The position numbers and the translations under genes are program-made. Below the pieces are notes generated by a model that had not been told where the DNA came from, searched no databases, and saw only the letters and a list, made by a program, of their open reading frames with translations. A DNA stretch of 63,502 nucleotides, filler included, from Pelomyxa schiedti (taxonomy: Eukaryota > Protista > Evosea): the NCBI GenBank assembly GCA_020536535.1. It is 5 parts of 5 records of this genome, joined end to end, with 100 filler letters (N's around TTAATTAATTAA, not from the genome) between each part and the next. Parts side by side here need not be neighbours in the genome. Positions count along the whole stretch, not along the records: positions 1 to 21,164 come from JAHLWZ010000374.1; 4 more parts are not named here. The stretch is one strand, 5' to 3'. Shown here piece by piece: positions 10,030-21,164 of the stretch. Each line of letters opens with the position of its first letter. Position 1 is the first letter of the stretch.

Positions 10030-10301
10030 GGCCCCTTTTCAATCTGAAAGCGTTTTCAGACACATGTGCCGGAGTCTTTGATTTAGGAGAAAAGAAGCAA
10101 AAAAAAACGAAAAAGTCGAAAAAAGTCTGGGCGAGTTGCCGCAGGACTCCGAAAAAAGACTTGTTGGGGGAACATGCCGAACTTTGTGGCGTTGGAGACA
10201 AGTTATTTTCTAAGCTCTTTTTAAACTCAAATAACCAAAAAAAAAACCAAAACCCAAAAACCAAAAACCAAACAACAAACAGTAGTACTAATAACATTTG
10301 G

Positions 10302-13300
10302 ATGTTACCTCATAACCAACAACAACAAAGGCGAGGAGGACATAATGGTGACAGGGGCAGAGGGAGGGGCCGTGGTGGACGTGGAGGTGGACCAGGGTCC
10401 GCGGGAAAGGAACAGTTCCAATGGATTCCTCTCGGTTCTTTCAATGGGGACAGGGTCGCTTCTGGGACCAGCAGCCATTTCCGGATTCAGCTGACTTACC
10501 CCAATGCAGAGAAAGTGCTGGTATGAGCTTTGTTTGTTTTCCGTTTTTATTTGCGGGATGTAGGGTTATCTTGTTTTAGTGAACTAGAATAAAGCCTCAC
10601 CTTGAACAGAATGCTGCTTGGATGCAGGAGGACTTAAGGTTGAAATTCTGCCTGTTGAGTAAAATTCTATCACCTTCGGCTTTATCCTGTGCCGAACCTA
10701 TTCCTGCAGTTCACACTATGCCTCCGGCAGTATCTTTTTATCCACTGGAGGAGGTATTCGAAGGCCGCCTGGGTAAGCTGCGTGATCAATGCGCACAAGC
10801 TGGCAATGGCTGTGCTGCCGTGGAAGTCTTTTACGAGTTCAGTTTCTCACAAGAGAATTCATGCTGTTTCACTTTATACCAGTGCTTGGCTGCCCCAAGT
10901 AGCGGCGCTCAGCCTCTGACTGCACAGAATATGTCCCAGGCCCCAGTGGCCTCTGTGACAACTGGTGTTCTGGCCCGGCGAGATTGGGGGCGGGCTTGCC
11001 ATTTCACAATTATACTGGTTGCTGATGGTGATAACGTAAGTCAAAACCTGTATTGTCTTGGAATAATATCTTCTTTTTCAGAAGGTTGCAGAGCCTCTTG
11101 GTGGAACTGTGCTTGGCACTCTTACGGCACATTTGTCATGCAACAATCCGACAGCCACACAACTGTACTTTACTTTTCTTTTCCTTTCCCCTTGATAATT
11201 CCTTTCAAGGTCGCATTTACGGTTCCCAACCCTCTTAAATGTTATGCAATCTGAGGATTTCACCACCTGGGAAAAGAAGGAGCTCTCTACATTTACTTCC
11301 CATGATGATCTTGCTTTTCTGCCAAAGATTCGAATCCACCCAGCATTTGGTGCAGCAGCGATTGTGCACTGCTCGTCATCTATCATTACAGAGCTGCTGC
11401 AGCGATGTGAAACTGTCATGGCCACATACAACAATGTAATCGCCGGAGTGGTGCCAAGTGGTTCACAGCTTCGCTTTAAATTTCAGCTTACTCCATTGCA
11501 TACTACCTCTCCACTTAATACCATGCCCCAACAGCTCTCATGCACCCTTCCACCAACAAGAACTATTGTTGAAAGACTACACTTGCAGACTCAGCGAAAC
11601 CTTCCAGTTTTTTCATACAGGGAGCAAATATGCCAACGCTTGGTAAAGGAGGGATGCTTGGTTGTTTCTTCACCTGGGGGTGCTGGGAAGAGCACCCAAA
11701 TTCCACAATACCTCGCCGATGATCCAACATTAGGTGTGTATTACCTTAATCGTATACCTCTACTCGAACTAATTCTTTTAAGGTCAAGGAGTTATTGTGT
11801 GCACCAACCCTTGTCATCTGGCGTTGAAACTTCTCAGTAGGCAGGTTACTTCTGAATTTGAAGGTATACAAGGAACAAAGGGGAGCATGGTCTCGCTAGG
11901 CAATGACGTCATTCTGAACACATGCAAAATCCTCTTCATGTCAGAAATGGGATTTATAGCAGCAGCCAAAAATGACCCAATGCTATCTGGTGTATCGGTT
12001 CTGATTGTGGATGAAGCACAACAAAGAACAGTGTATACTGACCTTGTCCTCAGCATTGGGCTTTCATGCTGGAAGAACACAGCGCGGCAGGGTCAACTAA
12101 GACTCCTTGCGTGCACATCCAGCTTACACTCGCAATCTCTGTGCAGTTATCTTGGCTGCTCCAGGCCTGTAGAAATTGTTATGCCTGGGCATCCTCATTC
12201 TGTGGAAACTCTCTTTTATCCTCCAATCTTGAGCAAAAACCCCAACAAATTTGCTACGCAAGTGCTTGAGGTTACATTAAATCAAGTCCAGCAAATACCC
12301 ACTGGAAACACTTTAGTGTTCCTTCCAGGGACACTTGAGATTGCACTTGCACGAAAATTTCTCCGCAACGCCAAGGTGGACTTCTCTTCTCGGGAACTCC
12401 ATGAAGAAGCCAAAGCAGCGGGTGAGTATGAACACATGTAAACTTGCAAAACTGACTCTCTTTCAAGATATCACACAGTTTGGTCACGGAAACATACGGC
12501 ATATCATATTCTGCACGGAAGCGGCAGAATCAATTTTCACTGTACCAAATGTCACCCTAGTGATTGATTCAGGGCTGAATCAGTCAAATATCTGCCGGCA
12601 AGAATCACACTTGACTGTAAGACAAGTAACCCGCATTTCAAGGGGTTCTTCTGCTGAAAGAATGAAACGGGCCAGTCTCCGGTATATTGGGCTCTATGGG
12701 TCACAAGAGATGCTCCCTGCCTTTGGGTTGCCAGAAATTAGCCACGCCAATTTGGATGGGATCATTCTGCAAATTATTTCTCTTGGGTTTGACCCTTGTA
12801 CTATTCCACTCCCTACAAAACCAGACCCTGTGCAGGTTGATAGGTCACTGGCGTTTCTCACGCAGCTTGGTTGCATTTCTAAGGCCCCTGACAAGGCATC
12901 TAAGTATACAATGATGCCACTCGGCCGCGCCTGCTCCAAGTTAGGAATAAGTGACTTGAGGTTGGCAGCTTTTGTTGCCAAAGCTTTCACAAAGTTCGGC
13001 CAACTCCAAATGGCTTGTACTATCGCTTGCCTTTTATCCTCCCCGGAAAGTGTCTTTGCCAGCAGTATCTTGAACCCACATACAAAATCGGCAGCAGCCG
13101 TGGGGCATATGAGTGATGCCAGCCTATTTGAAAGTGATATTACGTTTCTGTGCGAGAGATACTGTATGTGGGAGAAAAGCGGCTATGCCTGCCATATCCC
13201 CACCCACCAGGAAAGACTGCGGAAACAAAGGAGTTCACAGTGCCAAGAATGTATGCATCAATCAGCCTCTACCCTTGGCCTCAACAACCACGTGATGAAG

Positions 13301-16300
13301 TATGTGCAATTCCAGATAGCAGAAATGTGCCGGGAATTCCGGAGGTGGATTCCAGACCCAGTCGATACTGATAAAAGGGAAAGCTGGCTGGCCTTGTCAC
13401 TACTGGCACCTTTTCAAGATAACATTGGTGAAGTCTTGGTGCCGACTTCTCCAGAAAGGGGAGTCTCCTTGGCTATCTCAAAGAACCGGGCCCTCATTCA
13501 TCCAATGTCTTGCTTCCTGCAAAGAAGCAGGAGAAATCTCTCTCAGTATTTCGTGGCTTTGTCGGTACACCAAGAAAAAGGCCTTGTTGTTTCCGCTTTG
13601 CATCCAGTTTCCATGGAACAACTTTCTGAAGTCCTTGGAAACAGATGGTCCGTGGAACATGATTTCCCATTGAGGATGGCCCCTGTTCTTGAAAGGCCTG
13701 GCATGAGCTACACAACATTCCACCACTATGAGAAGGAACTTCGGGAATCAAACTCAATGACTGCCGTTTACAATAACGAGACCTGTTGTATCCAAGTATT
13801 CTCCAGCCGTGGGGATGCAGCCATTGCAAAACAACAAGCAAATGAGGCTCTTAACAAAATCATAGAAAAGCTACTCCACACCGATATTTCTGTAGCTGTA
13901 TGCTCTGCCAGTGCCATTGCAACATTTTCTGCCGGTTTGAGTGTTGTGCAATCAAAAGTAGCTGGGCACAGATGTTGCTTCACGAGGCTACCATTTAGCA
14001 CCACTGATGAGTTCAAAGGTTGGCTGGACACCGTTGTTGCCCATGAAAGTGATGTTGTCCATGCCAAATACACTGTGCAGTCTAGAAAAGCCCAGGTGAT
14101 CTTCTCCTCTGCTGAAGCACTCGAAACCACATGCGCCAGTGTTCGTAAATGGCAAAAGGGAAAGCGGAATAGTGATGGAGAAGGGTCTAGCTCTGGGGAT
14201 GAAGACTGTGTGGAGACAAGTTCATCCATGGAAGAGGAAGTGGGGAAGGAGTTATCCCTGAAATTCAATAGACTTGTAGCCTCCAAAGAAGAGATTGCAC
14301 AAATTTGTGAAATCTCCGAGTGCAAGCTGGCGGAGGCTGTGTGCTTGGCAGCAGATTGCACTGTTTTGATAAAACACCTTCCAGGAGGAACAACAGAAGA
14401 GAGCCTTAAAACTATGCTACAGGACATGGACGTGAGTGTGAGGATCAAAACCCACACAAACAATGTTTGGGCCTGGTTGCAGTTCCGTTCCTTAAATTCC
14501 TATAATCGCGCAAAGCCAGTTCTTCAATCCCTTGGGACCTGGCCGAGAGTTCAGATTCAACCACCTGAGAGCTGGTGCAGGTGGAGGATCAGGCTTGACA
14601 CTATGACAGCAGCAGATGTACTGTTTGGAGCAGTCAAAGGCAGGTCTCCATCTTGTTTGACCAACTGCCAGGGATGCTCACGGGTTGAAGTATTTGAGCC
14701 CGACACATATCCTTTGAAGGATATGTGTTCTGCCATCAGTGGTAAATTGCGTGGTGAAGTCGAGTGGAATTTAAAGCCCTGGAGAAAGTCAATGGTTGTG
14801 CGGTTTTCTGGTTCTCCAGGAAACTGTGCTCAAGCATCACGCTTCTTATCTGCGGCAACACAACCTATAGTCATCAAAGCCCACCCAGTGAAGAACCCTC
14901 TGCAATTTGAATTACTTAAAGAGCTAACAGAATCTGGTAAACTACAGGAGTGGGCAAAAGCCTTGGGCCTCAAAATTGCAAAGCAAAGGCGCACTCCAAG
15001 ATATAGAAGGAAAGGGCGCCATTCCCGTACAGATGAGTTCGCGGACACAAACTGTGTTATTTACGGAAATCAGGTCCAACAAGGTCAGTTCATGTATCAG
15101 CTGGGAGAATACTGTGATGAATTTCGCACCCGCTTTCTCTGCGTGAGAGTAAATACAATCGACCTTCCCCTGTTTAAAGAGGGGAAAGCCGGAGACTCAT
15201 TTCTATGCAGTCTCAAGAAAGAGTTTGAAGGAACTTGCCGGGTCTCTTTCCTGTACATCAAGGCTACTTTCGTTTTATGTGCAAACACCTCCAGCGTTCT
15301 AACAGCATGCCATAAAGCACTTCAAACTGGCCTTGCTGCAATGGGTGTACAGCACTTGATGAATCCATGTGTAAAATGCTCTAACCTGAGTGATATTCAG
15401 CTTTCCCTGTGCGGGCACTTCATGTGCGTGCAATGCTTTGAGAAGGAGGCAACTTCAAGTTCTTTCCCTGTTAAATGCAGCTCCTGCAACCTTCCGATTT
15501 GTTTAGATGACCTTCAGAATAACCTGGACAAAACCACCTTTGTGAATTTGTGCCAGTCTTCCTTCATGGAAAGTATACAACATAGCCGTGATATTGTACG
15601 GTGTCCAAACAGCGGCTGCAGAGGAATTCTGTCAAGCAACACCTATTCTTTATGTGGTGTTTGTAACACCTGGGCATGTGGCTCTTGCAAGGCAGTCAAT
15701 GACCCACACCATCTAAGGTCTTCTTGTGCTATGTACCAGGAACTACTCAAAGATATCGTTCCCTGTATAAGTCCAGGCTGCAAAGGGACCCTTTACAAAA
15801 GCAAAATGTACCAGTTGTGTGGTGGTTGCAAAAAATCAATTTGTGCGAACTGCAAGGTGTCGGATCAGGAGCTTCACATCAAGCGCTCATGCACAGAGTT
15901 TGTTCTAGCACTTTGTTCATTTTCGAAGTGCCCTGCTGGATGTGGAATGTACCTGAAAAAATCGGATCAGTACCAATGCTGCACCAAGTGTGGAAAATAT
16001 GTTTGCCCTTCCTGTTGCATCGTCAATGACCCTCTTCATGCTTCGAGAGGGTGCAATGCCTACCGGGAAGCCAAGTTGAACTTTGTTTCTTGTTCGGCTA
16101 ACTGTCCTGGATTACTTGAAAAAACTGCAGGATACCAAACATGCAAAGCTTGTGGACGTGAAGTCTGCCCTGATTGCAAAGTGTGCAATGAGCCAATGCA
16201 CAAGGGTAGAGCATGCCAGGAAACAAAACAACTTATCTCAAACGGGTGCTGCCTCTGTCCCCAGAGTGGTTGCACTGGTATTTTATATCCAGTGGGACCA

Positions 16301-17668
16301 AAGCAGTGTGCAGTCTGCCGTAAGTTTGTGTGCCCCACTTGCAAGTCTATTGAAATTACCGGAATCCATATGGGCTGCAGCTGTGCGGAGCTTGCACAAA
16401 GAAAATCAGAGTCGGCTATTGTGGAGCTGCTCTATTCCAGGGCTGAGAAGTGGGCGATAGAGCAGTGGTGTCCTACTCCTCCTGCAATAACCAACGTGGT
16501 ACGAAATCCAGGAGTAGAAACCAACTGCCCCGCCTTTCAACTCTTCCGGAAAGCAATTGCTCTGAACGACTGTGATAACAGCTGCTTCTTTGCTTGGCAC
16601 GGGACTCCTTCAGAAGAGGGAGTTGTCGGAATATCTCACTTTGGGTGGGATCCCCAACGCAGGAGGGGTCAAGCCTATGGGCCAGGAGAATACTTTGGAA
16701 TCACCAGTGCTGTGTCCCTTGGGTACTGTGGCAATGTGAAACGAATGATCGTGGCTTTGATAAGCAGGGCGCGTTCCACCACCGTTCAAGGGTTTTGTTA
16801 TGTTGTAAACAACCCTGTGGATAAGTCCTCCAGTTATTGTCTTCCTGTGCTCACTGTATCCTTTGGTGACGAAAGGAGCACACCCCGCTTCATCAGCGTA
16901 TCATCACCGCAAGGCATCTTATTGAATAATGGGCACTCAGTGAACCAGGAATGGGTGTCACCCTTCCGGTGGTTCTGGAAGACAGATAGTAACGAGTTTG
17001 AACCCTACCGCAATGAAGTCAGTGCAGTTTTGGAGGAGTTATATGACGCCTATAGCTGTGGCGGACCTGCAGTTGTCATGACACGGCCAATAATGCGGTA
17101 TGTTGATGACAGGCCCCAGGAGTACCGCATTGATTTCTTGTCCATGAAGCAGACCAATCCAGCAACAGGTTAACGCCCTAACATTACTACATCATTAAAT
17201 TGCAAGAACCGGAAACCACATAATCTAAATTATAAATACTAAAATACTAAAACTAAAAACTGTACTTATTATAAAGACTGCAATTTCCTTTCTTCACACA
17301 TTGCGACCCCCAGCAATATAACACACATCTAATTAACCAGAAACTCTAATCGGCCGAAAACTCACAAAACAACAGGTTACATCCGGCCGATTTGCCGGCG
17401 ACCACAGCCGATTGCGGCTGGCTCCAGAACCACGTGGCAGTACCTCTCCGACCAAGGATTATGGGTTCCATATGACCCGATTGTTCAAGGCACCATCGAA
17501 GCCGCGTTTCAGGTGTATTCCTCGTCCATAAGTTCCGGTCCTGCATCATCAGCACCCGGGACACTGAGGATACACCCGCCGGGCCCCTGGGAATATTCCA
17601 TCAGCTTCATCACCGGCATGCAGACAAATCTCTCAAACAACCAGACAAGGCCAATAAGGAGGAGTTAA
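10302..17668 (+). CDS. Giant fusion: RGG N-terminus - degenerate DEAH helicase/HA2/OB - RRM-like x2 - RING - 5x IBR-like - PARP-like ART - tandem WWE
   Basis: ORFs 10161, 10622, 11244, 11797 and 12335-17173 join by GT-AG introns. Motifs: GAGKSTQIPQ, VDEAQQR, LVFLPG, VIDSG; CxxC..CGH..CxxC..CxxC; five CxxxxC..CxxC..CxxC..H..C repeats; AWHGT..YGPGEYFG..SLGY; WFWKTD..F.PY. An extra exon 17376-17668 gives a second WWE domain. Confidence 0.88.
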
Positions 17669-17827
17669 ACCACATCATCCGTTTAATACCTGTATCACCA
17701 TCACCAAAAGTGGGGAAAAAAAAAATTAATTCTATTCTTTCTTTGAATTCACCTTTTGTCTTACAGTACAAACGTGTCTGTCACGTCTGAGACACAACTC
17801 ACACCAAACATCAAGGAGATCCTCACA

Positions 17828-20800
17828 ATGACCTCCGACAAGGTGACGAAAGCAAGGCCAATCCGACCGGACAGTCAAATCGGTGCATCACGTCCCCCAG
17901 CCAGAAAGCATTTCCTCTCTGCTGATTATTTGCTCACCAGCCAGCTAACCGAAGATGATGACGCATCAACAACAGACACAGACCGCGGCGCGGTGCTCAA
18001 GCCCACGTCCTCCTCGTTCTCCTCTTCCTCCTCCTCCTGTTCTTCTTCATGGCGGCGGTGGTAGTGCCACGAGGCCAACCACCATCGACTGCTTTGTCGT
18101 TGGGGAGTCTTCCTCCGACACGTATCTCCTCGACTTGCTTCACAAATACAACAGCAACAAGACCGGTGGCGAAATGGCCAAAGTCAGTCAAACCAGTCTG
18201 GACGGTGAGGAGGCCTCCTCATCCTCTGCGGCAGCAGCAGCAGCAGTTGTCCTGACGGACCTCACAATCACATCCCGGATCTACATGAAAAGCGATGGTG
18301 ATTGTAATTGTGATTGTGATTGCTCTTGCTTTTCTGCTGGACCTGCTGGCCGTGGTGGTGACATTGATGTTGTTTTTCACAGGAAGGGCAGTGAGGAGAT
18401 GAGACCTGAGTGTGTGCAAAAGGAAGGTTCGGTGGTTTTGGCAATGATGCCATTTGGGGACCACCAGTACAAGGAGGAGAACGAGGTGACAAAGAAAGCC
18501 TACATGAGCGATCTGTTGCTTGATTCTTGTGGGTCACGTCCTCTGAGCGGTGATGGGTCACTTATCCTGGTAAACTTTGGTGAAAAGCAGCCTGTTTTCA
18601 CACATATGGTGCCCAAGGGCAGCAACCCGCTGGATTATACCATGCTGGGCATTGCAATTGGGGTATGCATTATTGCTCTGTTCAAAAATATAGTAACTAA
18701 TGCAAAATTATTTAAAACCCAGATGAGAGCCGGGCATCTGTTCAAGAGTAATAGAGAGCCTGATAAGGAAACAATAAAAAATCTGATACATGCAATTGTT
18801 CATACTTCTCAGACTTCTTATCGTAATGGCCAAGGTTGCTCCCTCCAATTCCATTGGCATTCATTTTTTCTTACTGTTACTTCCAACACTGCAGGGTCCT
18901 TTCACAAGAAGAAGTGCCGAAGAACGTGTTTGTCATCTTGTTTCCTGGAGGCACTATCATTTCCAAAGGAAGGACTGATTGGAGTCACAAAGATGAGCTG
19001 CCTACACCTCCGACCGTTAGTTCGCTTAGTATTATCATCATACAATTTGAAGTCTGCTACTGTATTTGAAAGCTTGTTGCCACTCTGGTTTCAAGCTGAG
19101 AACTGGCCTGCTGTGGATGAGCTTGTTTTATCAAACTTCTTTCTTGAGTCAGAACTGCAAGTGCCACTTCACTCAAGGTTTGTGCCACAACTGGAAGGGA
19201 TTCATTGTCGTGGTGTTGTGCTACACTCTAAAGAAGTTCAGAGCCATGGAATTCCAGAGTGGCTCCTACGTCCAAGGGTTGGGGGAATGAGGTTCCACCC
19301 AGAACAACCAACCTACCTCCCAAAATCCAGCAATTCACCAGATTGGTCATTCCTCAAACTCTTCCTGTCGTTTGGTGATGAGGTAATCACTGAAGAGGCA
19401 CCCAACAGAATTGTTTTTGTTATGCTTGGGGGCCCTTCCCCAGAAAAAGTGGCACTGCTGAAATGCCTGATGGAGAACAAAGTCAAAGCGACTGTGAAGA
19501 TCTCCACCACCAAAGCTCCCCCAGTTATCCAAGTGCACAAAGCCTTCAAGCTGTGGAACACATCCAAACCTCCACTTTCTGACCTGTGCTCAGCATGGGA
19601 AATAGGTCTGTATTTGATTCTGTCTAATTTTTGGATAATCGAAAAAACAAGGTGGAGGGGACACAGAAAATGAGTGGAACCCATTTAATCCATGTTTCTT
19701 TTTCAGTGACTCAGTCTTCATGCTTGCTTTTGATCCATCATCACAAACACAGATTTCTAACTTGGATTTCTGGATAAACGAAATCAGTTCACGCCACAGA
19801 AACAAGATGAATCCTCTGTGTTATCGTCCACACTCTCACAAACCCCAAGTGCTCCTAGTTGGAACTAGGACAAAGTACTTTGACGGGAAGCTTTTCAGGA
19901 CCATCAAGTCTCGGTGGGAAAGCAGAATTAACATCCTTGGCTATTTTATCCTTGACCCAGAAACTGGGTTTGGGATTTCATGGCACCCACACAACTTAAC
20001 CCCCTCCAAGCACAAGTCAATCATTCCGTCCATTGCAGGGGCAATACAAAGTACCCACAAAGCCAAATACAACATCCCACAAACCTGGGCCAGATTTCGT
20101 GCTCATTTGGGTACTGTCAAAGCAAGTGCAGTGAAGTGGTCACAGCTTGCTAGAATTGCACATGACTGTGGGGTGGGAAGATGCGCGCGAAAGGTGAGCC
20201 AAGCAGCTGAGGAGGAGGAAATGAGGCTGTGCTTTGACTGGCTCTCTGACATTGGTGCCCTTTTTCACTTGAGGCACAATGCTGCTTCTCAAAGAATGGA
20301 AGATGACATTGTTGCCTTGGATCCATCCTGGTTCAATGACACCAATAAGTTGCTGCCTGTCGAGATACATCTAATTCCCTCTGATGCAAGTGAGTCACCA
20401 TTGGAATCCCTGCAGCGATACACAATTAAACACCTGCACGATCATCACATCGGCACTGATATGACCAGTGTCCTTTTGCAAGTGGGAGTGCTGGTGAACA
20501 GCATCAACAACCAGCCACACTTCTCGTTCTCCAAGCTTCCTTCAGTCTCCTCCCACTCCTCTCTTGTTGATAAGTTCTGCAAGCTATGTGGTGATGACAC
20601 CAATGCCTCTGGGTGTCTCCTCTGCCTTAAGCTCCTTCCCATTGAATCATTCTCCAAGGTTATGTGCCATCTGAGCAAAATGCCAGGTGTTCACCCAATT
20701 CAAATCAGAAGAGATGGTATACTGGTCTCAAAAACTCAATACCAGAGGGGTGATACAGGTCCTGTTGCTGTTGATGGAGCTGGTGAAACTCACCTTATGA

Positions 20801-21164
20801 TGATTCGTACTGTGGATCCAAGACACGAACAAAACACACTCGTTTTGGTGGTAATGGGAGCAGAAAGGATTCAGAGGAGTAGAAACCTGAGGCGAGGGGA
20901 TAATTTACTAGCTGTTGCAACAAATTGTTTCCTTGGAAGTCCAGATTCAACATGTGAATTCTTTATCGATTCCTTATCCATTTGCACCAGCTGCCTGTCA
21001 CAATACTTGCATATGAATAGGTCTCACTCAGAAGGTAATGAAAGTGAGACAAACAAACTATTGCAGACAATGGTGGCTGTACATGGTGGTTACTCTCAGG
21101 ACATTGCCATGGACAAGTGCAGTAAAGCTGCCAAGGCAGAGATTGGCTACTCTGACTGCTTCTA
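17828..21164 (+). CDS. Roc-COR (ROCO-like) protein with degenerate GTPase motifs; 3' end truncated at scaffold end
   Basis: Roc-like IVFVMLGGPSPEKVALLKCL, WEIG/GG, FFFSDSVFMLAFD...LDFWINEI...VLLVGT. COR-like IPQTW..F...VKWSQL..IA..CG...CFDWLSDIGALFH...VALDPSWF. The start is either ATG 17955 or ATG 17828 with intron 17843-17954. Confidence 0.72.

What the first reader, a model, noticed from the sequence alone, without database searches (positions are those of the whole stretch)
10302..17668. One gene combining RNA-helicase fold, RRMs, RING-IBR array, ADP-ribosyltransferase and tandem WWE: a candidate RNA-sensing ADP-ribosylation/ubiquitination system
Seen: all domain motifs lie in one spliceable frame of roughly 2200-2300 aa. 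Established: the DEAH-RRM-RING-IBR part resembles plant DEAH11/12-type helicase-RBR proteins. WWE domains bind ADP-ribose and couple ADP-ribosylation to RING ligases (RNF146, Deltex), and ART-WWE proteins (PARP12, ZAP) are antiviral. Inference: one polypeptide could bind RNA, ADP-ribosylate, read the mark and ubiquitinate, which would be an amoebal innate-immunity or RNA-quality-control module. I do not know of this full architecture being described.
Basis: partly seen in the sequence, partly recalled or inferred. Interest (0 to 1): 0.85.

Follow-up and report, generated by a model that had tools for sequence, protein, structure and literature searches.

The report
Helicase–RING–IBR–PARP–WWE fusion gene in Pelomyxa
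This is a real, expressed amoeba gene for a giant protein that joins an RNA-helicase body, RNA-binding-like modules, a ubiquitin-ligase RING–IBR part, a PARP-type ADP-ribosyltransferase and two ADP-ribose-reading WWE domains; it belongs to a widespread but unstudied eukaryotic family in which the catalytic end of an RBR ubiquitin ligase has been replaced by the ADP-ribosylation module.

Summary
The piece is a Pelomyxa schiedti contig, and 10622–17668 (+) encodes an annotated 2217-aa protein misnamed "HrpB". One 4.7-kb exon carries the helicase C-half, the RRM/KH-like linkers, RING1, five IBR modules, a PARP-like domain and WWE1. A 207-nt intron, spliced out in two RNA libraries, precedes WWE2.

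- **No RING2/Rcat.** The "RING–IBR array" lacks it, so this is not a complete RBR ligase.
- **Degenerate helicase.** This copy has DEAQ, TSS and ERMKRASL where its relatives, including other Pelomyxa paralogs, are canonical.
- **Variant ART.** The domain is short with an H–Y–Cys triad. Its nicotinamide-pocket residues are conserved, and it is closest to PARP12/ZAP.

The architecture is not unique. At least 241 representative clusters carry the ART–WWE–WWE module, many of them 1200–2800 aa. They come from Amoebozoa, stramenopiles, Rhizaria, Picozoa, metamonads, diplonemids, bdelloid rotifers and Hydra.

Profile comparison (99.5%, E 8e-23) shows the linker–RING1–IBR part is co-linear with DEAH11/12-type helicase–RBR proteins. 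In this family their Rcat is replaced by ART–WWE2.

I found no paper describing the family. The likely function is RNA-anchored mono-ADP-ribosylation coupled to E2~ubiquitin recruitment; that is inferred, not shown.

The parts
10302..10520 (+). Candidate extra 5' coding exon (RGG-rich, 73 codons). It would join in frame to 10610 through a GT(10521)..AG(10609) intron.
   Evidence: Sequence reading only. It is not in the annotated model P0001 and was not tested with RNA.
10622..11035 (+). Exon 1 of the annotated model (residues 1–138). This N-terminal region has no detectable relatives.
   Evidence: Exact mapping of P0001 on the window; GT..AG borders; BLAST to paralogs only starts at residue about 282.
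11081..11166 (+). Exon 2 (residues 139–166; borders within 2 nt).
11210..11733 (+). Exon 3, holding helicase motif I (GAGKST at 11679–11696).
   Evidence: The junction 11733 to 11783 appears as a 13-nt loose end in RNA run X3.
11783..12421 (+). Exon 4, holding helicase motifs Ia–IV. It has DEAQ at 12010–12021 in place of DEAH, and TSS in place of SAT.
12466..17168 (+). Exon 5, a single 4.7-kb coding exon. It holds the helicase C-half (motif VI ERMKRASL at 12656–12679), the WH/ratchet region, the RRM/KH-like linkers, RING1, IBR x5, the ART domain and most of WWE1.
   Evidence: Uninterrupted ORF 12335–17173; mapping.
12728..13597 (+). Winged-helix/ratchet (HA2-like) and following region of DEAH/RHA helicases.
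   Evidence: Family profile A3 matches DHX15/Prp43/HrpA at 1e-23 to 1e-19 over profile positions 4–176.
13676..15343 (+). Chain of small alpha/beta modules, RRM-like and KH-like. The most RRM-like are at 13973–14173 and 14357–14542.
   Evidence: AF2 model with pLDDT 79. VIA-align gives RRM matches at Z 8–9.7 and KH matches at Z about 8. The region is co-linear with the RRM/KH_DEAH11 region of DEAH11-type proteins. Pfam RRM_1 is not significant in P0001.
15368..15517 (+). RING1 (C3HC4).
   Evidence: Cys/His pattern conserved across the family; aligned to RING1 of DEAH11-type RBR proteins.
15602..16384 (+). Five tandem IBR-like C6HC zinc modules (15602–15727, 15764–15892, 15914–16054, 16091–16216, 16247–16384). 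No Rcat/RING2 follows.
   Evidence: Pattern scan with a positive control for Rcat. Most relatives have a single IBR; Archamoebae copies have 4–5.
16409..16873 (+). PARP-like ADP-ribosyltransferase domain. Residues: H1931 (16598–16600), Y1962 (16691–16693), S1970/Y1973, and C1997 (16796–16798) at the presumed catalytic-Glu position.
   Evidence: Profile A2 against PARP12 at 3.9e-10, with ZAP and PARP15/10/14 following. AF2 pLDDT 86. Foldseek matches PARP12/13/TNKS. Residue conservation across 170 relatives.
16961..17413 (+). WWE domain 1, interrupted by the intron 17169–17375.
   Evidence: Pfam WWE. Invariant W, W, Y, E, Y, Q, R, R columns. Alignment to the WWE domains of DTX1, TRIP12 and ZAP.
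17169..17375 (+). Last intron, 207 nt, GT..AG.
   Evidence: Skipped in RNA contigs of runs X1 and X2 and retained in the DNA run X4.
17429..17668 (+). WWE domain 2 and the stop codon (17666–17668).
   Evidence: Pfam WWE second stretch at residues 2140–2216; TRIP12 WWE alignment; RNA contigs reach 17671–17676.

Best explanation
The locus is one expressed Pelomyxa schiedti gene. It encodes a protein of about 2200 aa from a widespread, uncharacterised eukaryotic family with this architecture: DEAH/RHA helicase, RRM/KH-like linkers, RING1, IBR (one to five copies), a PARP12/ZAP-like mono-ART domain with an H–Y–Cys triad, and tandem WWE.

The family derives from DEAH11/12-type helicase–RBR ligases. 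The catalytic RING2 (Rcat) has been replaced by the ART–WWE–WWE module.

Proposed working (inferred):
1. The helicase body and the RRM/KH-like modules hold the protein on RNA or RNPs.
2. The ART domain uses NAD+ to mono-ADP-ribosylate nearby proteins, itself, or possibly RNA ends.
3. The tandem WWE binds the ADP-ribose mark and retains or activates the protein there.
4. RING1–IBR recruits an E2~ubiquitin, so that ADP-ribosylated targets are ubiquitinated.

In this particular paralog the ATPase motifs are degenerate. The helicase part therefore probably serves as an RNA-binding scaffold rather than a motor, while the ART–WWE end is kept intact.
For: Shown:
- Single 1612-codon exon plus GT..AG introns, giving the annotated 2217-aa protein.
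- The 3' part (16049–17671) is transcribed and its 207-nt intron spliced in two RNA libraries.
- WWE x2.
- PARP fold and profile match to PARP12/ZAP.
- Near-invariant conservation across about 150 relatives of H-G, the Y of GEYF, S, Y and the NNP motif, with Cys in 128 of 147.
- DEAH/RHA WH/ratchet match.
- Linker–RING1–IBR co-linear with DEAH11-type RBR proteins at 99.5% probability and E 8e-23.
- No Rcat in any family member, while DEAH11-type controls have one.
- Degenerate motifs II, III, V and VI in this copy only, against canonical motifs in P0175, P0218, Mastigella and Pyxidicula.
- Family spread over many eukaryotic supergroups, with expansions in bdelloid rotifers and Archamoebae.

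From established knowledge: WWE domains bind ADP-ribose or iso-ADP-ribose and couple it to E3 ligases (RNF146, Deltex), and PARPs lacking the catalytic Glu are mono-ARTs.
Against: - No biochemical data exist for any family member.
- P0001 alone does not reach Pfam's PARP threshold (15.4 against 26.7 bits).
- The equivalence of C1997 to Glu988/Ile660 rests on strand order and motif spacing, not on a residue-level structural alignment. The sequence alignment to PARP12 stops before that strand.
- An RBR-type RING1 normally needs an Rcat cysteine to pass ubiquitin on, so ordinary RING-type ligase activity is not assured.
- No RNA contig covers 12000–16049, so a single full-length transcript is inferred from the continuous ORF only.
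- RRM assignments are only fold-level and near the tool's noise band.
Confidence: 0.55

Rival explanations
1. Ubiquitin–ADP-ribose coupling enzyme. With Rcat gone, RING1-bound E2~Ub is discharged inside the ART/WWE pocket. The acceptor would be either a hydroxyl of bound ADP-ribose or NAD+ (as Deltex RING–DTC does), or the ART would ADP-ribosylate ubiquitin. The conserved active-site Cys could even act as a relay. The product would be hybrid Ub–ADPr marks on RNA-bound proteins or on RNA ends.
For: The Rcat is precisely replaced by ART–WWE2 directly after the IBR. Cys is conserved in 128 of 147 relatives at the presumed catalytic position, together with Glu in GEYF and the NNP motif. The domain inventory parallels Deltex (WWE–WWE–RING plus an NAD+/ADPr-binding domain) and PARP9/DTX3L. 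Deltex ligases ubiquitylate ADP-ribose, including on nucleic acids (PMC10810221, PMC11460948, PMC12000418).
Against: The argument rests on architecture alone. The ART fold is unrelated to DTC. Cys may simply be one more hydrophobic replacement of Glu, as Ile, Leu or Tyr are in human mono-ARTs. No assay exists.
Confidence: 0.2
2. Catalytically dead PARP-like domain, as in ZAP/PARP13 or PARP9. The protein would be an RNA-binding scaffold that only reads NAD+ or ADP-ribose through ART plus WWE and recruits partners. ADP-ribosylation would be done by other PARPs.
For: The catalytic Glu is absent. The domain is short, lacking about 25 residues of the acceptor-loop region relative to PARP12. ZAP is among the best PDB matches. 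The helicase of this copy also looks inactive.
Against: ZAP and PARP9 have lost the His or Tyr of the NAD+ pocket. Here H-G, Y, S and Y are almost invariant over about 150 diverse relatives, which argues for retained NAD+ binding and probably catalysis.
Confidence: 0.2
3. A decaying paralog (pseudogene in the making), or an annotation or assembly artefact that fuses two genes.
For: Helicase motifs are degenerate and identity to the other Archamoebae copies is only 29–31%. One RNA contig is unspliced across the intron at 11734–11782.
Against: A 1612-codon frame without a stop. All family-invariant ART and WWE residues are retained. The 3' part is transcribed and correctly spliced. The same co-linear architecture is present in dozens of species, so no fusion artefact is needed. 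The DNA run holds the whole stretch in one contig.
Confidence: 0.05

Closest known systems
DEAH11/DEAH12-type helicase–RBR proteins (plants, molluscs and other eukaryotes; Pfam DEAD + Helicase_C + OB_NTP_bind + KH_DEAH11 + IBR)
   Same: DEAH/RHA helicase followed by RRM/KH-like linkers, RING1 and IBR in the same order. Profile–profile match at 99.5%, E 8e-23, over 631 columns. They are the nearest helicase cores outside the family and the nearest ESM Atlas clusters.
   Different: Those proteins end in a RING2/Rcat with the GC-x-H/K-x-x-C catalytic motif. Here that domain is absent, and a PARP-like ART plus two WWE domains stand in its place. Pfam KH_DEAH11 and OB_NTP_bind are not detected in this family at E 0.01.
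PARP12 / ZAP (PARP13) / PARP7 / PARP11 group of WWE-containing PARPs
   Same: The ART domain is most similar to PARP12 and ZAP. It is associated with tandem WWE and with RNA-binding modules. The catalytic Glu is replaced, as in mono-ARTs.
   Different: The WWE pair lies after the ART domain, not before it. The RNA-binding part is a DEAH helicase with RRM/KH-like modules instead of CCCH fingers. The third triad residue is Cys. About 25 residues of the acceptor-loop region are missing. A RING1–IBR is present.
Deltex E3 ligases (DTX1–4, DTX3L with PARP9/PARP14)
   Same: Tandem WWE is the best structural match (DTX1, Drosophila Deltex). A RING is combined with an NAD+/ADP-ribose-binding domain. 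PARP9, PARP14 and DTX3L also carry KH-like or RRM modules (PMC11080071).
   Different: No DTC domain (no Pfam hit). The RING is of the RBR RING1 type and is followed by IBR. Here everything sits in one chain together with a helicase.
RNF146 (Iduna)
   Same: The RING plus WWE logic: reading ADP-ribose to direct ubiquitination.
   Different: RNF146 has one WWE specific for iso-ADP-ribose of poly-ADP-ribose and has no ART, helicase or IBR.

Membership tests
DEAH/RHA RNA helicases | Conserved motifs I, II (DEAH), III (SAT), V (TNxAETS) and VI (QRxGRAGR) | tested here: not met
   P0001 has GAGKST (intact), DEAQQR, TSS, TEAAES and ERMKRASL. Relatives, including Pelomyxa P0175 and P0218, are canonical. 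The family is DEAH/RHA; this copy is a degenerate member.
DEAH/RHA RNA helicases | Winged-helix and ratchet (HA2) domains after RecA2 | tested here: met
   Profile A3 matches DHX15, Prp43, Prp2 and HrpA at 1e-23 to 1e-19. Pfam Helicase_C at 2.8e-5 in P0001.
RBR (RING-between-RING) E3 ligases | RING1 followed by IBR | tested here: met
   C3HC4 RING1 and C6HC IBR patterns, aligned to RING1 and IBR of DEAH11-type RBRs.
RBR (RING-between-RING) E3 ligases | RING2/Rcat with the catalytic cysteine | tested here: not met
   No Rcat pattern in P0001 or in any family member fetched. The positive control was found in P0237 and read by eye in P0231. The position is occupied by the ART domain.
PARP (ARTD) ADP-ribosyltransferases | PARP catalytic fold and sequence signature | tested here: met
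   Family profile against PARP12 at 3.9e-10, with ZAP, PARP15, PARP10 and PARP14 at 1e-7 to 1e-5. Foldseek matches PARP12/13/TNKS. Paralogs pass Pfam PARP. P0001 alone is below the cut-off.
PARP (ARTD) ADP-ribosyltransferases | H–Y–E triad (His and Tyr for NAD+ binding, Glu for chain elongation) | tested here: inconclusive
   H1931 and Y1962, plus the S1970/Y1973 pocket residues, are conserved. Glu is absent. The equivalent residue is inferred to be C1997 from strand order, without a residue-level structural alignment. This would predict mono-ART activity at most.
WWE domain proteins | WWE fold with the conserved W/Y/Q/R ligand-binding residues | tested here: met
   Pfam WWE at 1e-23 in two stretches. 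Tandem-WWE structural matches to DTX1, ZAP and Deltex. Alignments to ADP-, ATP- and ADPr-bound WWE structures. Invariant columns. Ligand binding itself was not tested.
RRM proteins | RRM fold with RNP1/RNP2 motifs (Pfam RRM_1) | tested here: inconclusive
   No Pfam RRM_1 hit in P0001; one of 22 relatives hits at 0.004. Fold matches to RRMs at Z 8–9.7 lie near the tool's stated background. An RNP-like motif is visible at 14357–14542.
Deltex E3 ligases | C-terminal RING–DTC module | tested here: not met
   No DTC family among the Pfam hits of P0001 or its relatives.

The most novel reading that the evidence does not exclude
An ancient eukaryotic enzyme class in which an RBR ligase lost its catalytic Rcat and gained an NAD+-binding ART plus tandem WWE. 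A single chain on RNA would then join ubiquitin to ADP-ribose, either by ubiquitylating ADP-ribose or by ADP-ribosylating ubiquitin. That would make it a one-polypeptide counterpart of the vertebrate PARP9/PARP14–DTX3L system.
Probability: 0.2. Interest if true: 0.85.

Novelty: new variant of a known kind. Interest (0 to 1): 0.62.

Why it matters
Crosstalk between ADP-ribosylation and ubiquitination is at present known from separate proteins or complexes: RNF146 with tankyrase, Deltex with PARP9/14, and Legionella SidE. This family puts an RNA-binding helicase body, an E2-recruiting RING1–IBR, an ART and two ADP-ribose readers into one chain. It is present from amoebae to rotifers and Hydra, so the link between RNA, ADP-ribose and ubiquitin may be much older than vertebrate antiviral PARPs.

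The exact replacement of Rcat by ART–WWE is a natural experiment on how RBR ligases can be rewired. It gives a directly testable biochemical hypothesis. It also shows that the database names for these proteins (HrpB, DHX15, splicing-factor helicase) are misleading.

Tried and rejected
- Pfam on the raw exons gave only WWE, with sub-threshold PARP and Helicase_C.
- Pfam on the 320–460-aa tails that follow WWE2 in ten relatives found nothing.
- hhalign of the linker profile against the single sequence P0230 was insignificant (7.6%). Only a three-sequence DEAH11-type profile gave the clear result.
- A profile of the C-terminal half of the ART domain could not be aligned to PARP12 beyond the strand before the Cys. 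The Cys = Glu988 equivalence therefore stays an inference.
- The word-indexed search with the linker region found only family members and no DEAH11-type proteins.
- The ESM Atlas shape search of the 596-residue linker model gave only TM below 0.4.
- The inverted-repeat search around the odd 40-nt inverted piece of an RNA contig found nothing.
- The neighbourhood of paralog P0175 showed no tandem array or telling neighbours.
- Five literature searches found no description of the architecture.
- The pseudogene and fusion-artefact readings were considered and judged unlikely, as set out under the rival explanations.
Full report
**What is in the sequence**

The region holds a 1612-codon open frame at 12335–17173 on the + strand. 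A search of the protein collection returned a 100%-identical annotated protein, P0001. It is 2217 aa, named "ATP-dependent helicase HrpB [Pelomyxa schiedti]", and lies on a contig of 21164 nt, the length of this piece. The organism is therefore the anaerobic archamoeba Pelomyxa schiedti.

Mapping P0001 back onto the window gives six coding exons, with borders accurate to within 2 nt:
- 10622–11035
- 11081–11166
- 11210–11733
- 11783–12421
- 12466–17168
- 17376–17668

All introns are GT..AG. Four are 45–50 nt long and the last is 207 nt.

It can be joined in frame through GT(10521)..AG(10609) and would give about 2294 aa. It is not part of the annotation and I could not test it.

**RNA evidence**

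Three single-cell RNA libraries and one DNA run from the same study hold parts of the stretch. I laid them on 11700–17699.
- RNA contigs of two libraries cover 16049–17671 and 16203–17532. Both skip exactly the 207-nt intron (GT..AG).
- The DNA run keeps the intron and holds the whole stretch in one contig.
- A third RNA library shows the 11733-to-11783 junction as a loose end.
- One RNA contig is co-linear with the genome across that small intron, which means intron retention or carried-over DNA.
- No RNA contig covers 12000–16049.

The physical link between the helicase and the ART–WWE part therefore rests on the uninterrupted 4.7-kb exon, not on a transcript.

**Domains**

*WWE.* Pfam finds two WWE domains in P0001 (E 1e-23) and a Helicase_C match (2.8e-5).

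*ART, sequence level.* The PARP match of P0001 alone is below Pfam's cut-off (15.4 against 26.7 bits). A profile of 25 relatives matches the catalytic domains of PARP12 (3.9e-10), ZAP, PARP15, PARP10 and PARP14.

*ART and WWE, structure level.* An AlphaFold model of residues 1868–2217 has mean pLDDT 86. Foldseek matches its C-terminal half to the tandem WWE of DTX1, ZAP and Drosophila Deltex (E 1e-8 to 1e-5). It matches the N-terminal half to PARP12, PARP13 and tankyrase catalytic domains (E 5e-4 to 3e-3). The WWE sequences align with the ADP-, ATP- and ADPr-bound WWE domains of TRIP12, DTX1 and ZAP.

*Helicase accessory domains.* The region after the RecA domains matches the winged-helix/ratchet part of DHX15, Prp43 and HrpA (1e-23).

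*Linker modules.* The 600 residues before the RING fold, at pLDDT 79, into a chain of small alpha/beta modules. The best structural neighbours are RRMs (Z 8–9.7) and KH domains (Z about 8). These values are close to what that tool gives for unrelated folds. Pfam RRM_1 is not significant in this protein. The RRM claim is therefore only partly confirmed. The stretch at 14357–14542 has RNP-like motifs.

**The RING–IBR part**

After a C3HC4 RING come five tandem C6HC modules with the IBR spacing. The three Pelomyxa paralogs have five. Mastigella, Mastigamoeba and one unnamed protein have four. All other relatives have one.

None of the family members contains a RING2/Rcat. The same pattern search finds one in the DEAH11-type control P0237, and one is readable in P0231. 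The module is therefore RING1–IBR(n) without the catalytic domain that defines RBR ligases.

**The ART active site**

Counts are over 170 aligned relatives:
- The His-Gly of the first strand is present in 148 of 149.
- The Tyr of GEYF is present in 155 of 156. By the PARP12 alignment this is the triad Tyr.
- The following Ser and Tyr, and an NNP motif, are almost invariant.
- The residue that opens the next-to-last strand is Cys in 128 of 147.

By strand order in the model and by spacing to the last strand, this Cys (C1997) takes the place of Glu988 in PARP1 and Ile660 in PARP12. This is an inference. The sequence alignment to PARP12 breaks off just before it, because the family lacks about 25 residues of the acceptor-loop region.

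A retained NAD+ pocket without the Glu is the signature of mono-ADP-ribosyltransferases (established knowledge on PARP10, PARP12 and PARP14).

**The helicase of this copy**

Most relatives have canonical DEAH motifs: GSGK(S/T)T, DEAHER, SAT, TNVAETS and QRKGRAGR. So do the other Pelomyxa paralogs P0175 and P0218, Mastigella, Mastigamoeba and Pyxidicula.

P0001 has GAGKST, DEAQQR, TSS, TEAAES and ERMKRASL. Its ATPase is probably impaired. Every family-invariant residue of the ART and WWE domains is kept.

P0001 is only 29–31% identical to the other Archamoebae copies, but co-linear with them from residue about 282 to the end.

**Distribution**

An exhaustive profile search with the ART–WWE–WWE module found 241 representative clusters at E 1e-30 or better. 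Many are 1200–2800 aa long.

Named members:

| Group | Taxa |
|---|---|
| Amoebozoa | Pelomyxa, Mastigella, Vermamoeba, Pyxidicula |
| Stramenopiles | oomycetes (Lagenidium, Aphanomyces); chrysophytes/synurophytes (Pedospumella, Mallomonas) |
| Rhizaria | Paulinella |
| Picozoa | Picozoa sp. |
| Metamonada | Chilomastix |
| Diplonemids | Namystynia |
| Unclassified eukaryotes | two species |
| Metazoa | many bdelloid rotifer paralogs, Hydra |

In a tree of the module, the other two Pelomyxa paralogs group with Mastigella (98/91) and the rotifer copies form one clade (97/94). P0001 joins the multi-IBR group only weakly, and the deep branches are unresolved.

The architecture is thus not unique to this amoeba. 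It looks old, with lineage-specific expansions.

**Relation to known families**

Ranked by helicase core, the family's own members are followed directly by proteins carrying DEAD, Helicase_C, OB_NTP_bind, KH_DEAH11 and IBR. These are the DEAH11/12 type, and they rank ahead of bacterial HrpA.

A profile of the linker–RING1–IBR region aligns co-linearly with three such proteins over 631 columns (probability 99.5%, E 8e-23). The alignment ends at the IBR. There the DEAH11 type continues with Rcat, while this family continues with a helix, the ART domain and the two WWE domains.

The simplest reading is a domain swap in an ancestral helicase–RBR.

**Literature**

Five full-text searches found no paper describing a helicase–RING–IBR–PARP–WWE protein. 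The 2010 survey of eukaryotic PARPs does not contain the word helicase. The proteins exist in databases only under automatic names.

**How it most likely works**

Shown: the domain set, its order, the conservation of the NAD+ pocket and of the WWE ligand residues, the absence of Rcat, and expression of the 3' part.

Inferred:
1. The helicase body and RRM/KH-like modules bind RNA or RNPs.
2. The ART domain mono-ADP-ribosylates nearby targets.
3. The WWE pair reads the mark.
4. RING1–IBR brings in E2~ubiquitin.

RBR-type RING1 domains usually depend on Rcat. A more unusual chemistry therefore cannot be excluded, namely ubiquitin transfer onto ADP-ribose as in Deltex ligases (PMC10810221, PMC11460948, PMC12000418), or ADP-ribosylation of ubiquitin. 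A purely reading, non-catalytic ART as in ZAP is the conservative rival. The conserved His, Tyr, Ser and Tyr speak against it.

An immune or RNA-surveillance role is suggested only by three things: the similarity to PARP12/ZAP, the expansions in rotifers and Archamoebae, and the occurrence of degenerate paralogs.

**Verdict**

This is a new variant of known kinds, with elements of helicase–RBR, WWE-PARP and Deltex-like logic, and it is not a singular invention of this amoeba.

Noticed in passing
window 17955-21164 (+): Two long open frames lie downstream of the gene: 17955–19673 (572 aa, no Pfam hit) and 19720 to the piece's end (at least 481 aa). The second has a weak COR-A (Roc–COR) match at E 0.0038, below the cut-off. 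This may be one ROCO-like gene with a degenerate GTPase part.
   Followed up: partly
window 16413, 16479, 17544, 17578, 17618: RNA contigs differ from the genome by four substitutions and an in-frame 3-nt deletion at 17544, in the Ser-rich loop of WWE2. Two libraries share the 3' differences. This is probably allelic or cell-to-cell variation rather than editing. No matched DNA from the same cell was available.
   Followed up: no
window 16695-16734: One RNA contig (run X1) carries this 40-nt piece in the opposite orientation inside an otherwise co-linear contig. No inverted repeat flanks it. It is probably an assembly artefact, but it is unexplained.
   Followed up: partly
window 11734-11782: The small intron is retained in an RNA contig of run X1, while run X3 shows the spliced junction. 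This means either intron retention or genomic DNA carried into the single-cell RNA library.
   Followed up: no
relatives P0045, P0053, P0057, P0059, P0066, P0070, P0074 and others: In Paulinella, oomycete, chrysophyte and Chilomastix members, 320–460 further residues follow WWE2. None has a Pfam match. This is an unknown extra C-terminal domain of the family.
   Followed up: partly
relatives P0203, P0180, P0228, P0227: The same helicase core is fused to other end modules in other species: LSDAT/SLOG-type domains (PF18171, PF18139, PF25508) in an Adineta protein, a CCCH finger plus WWE in P0180, a 3'-5' exonuclease domain (PF01612) in an unclassified eukaryote, and an annexin repeat in Mastigamoeba. 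The helicase seems to be a platform for swapping effector ends.
   Followed up: no
Pelomyxa paralogs P0002, P0175, P0218 (other contigs): Pelomyxa has at least four paralogs. P0002 and P0175 are 74% identical and lie on the same 144,564-nt contig, but not within 10 kb of each other. P0218 ends after the ART domain and has no WWE. Their NCBI names (HrpB, DHX15, splicing-factor helicase) are automatic and misleading.
   Followed up: partly
window 10225-10295: An A/C-rich low-complexity tract (runs of A and CA-type repeats) lies directly upstream of the candidate start at 10302.
   Followed up: no
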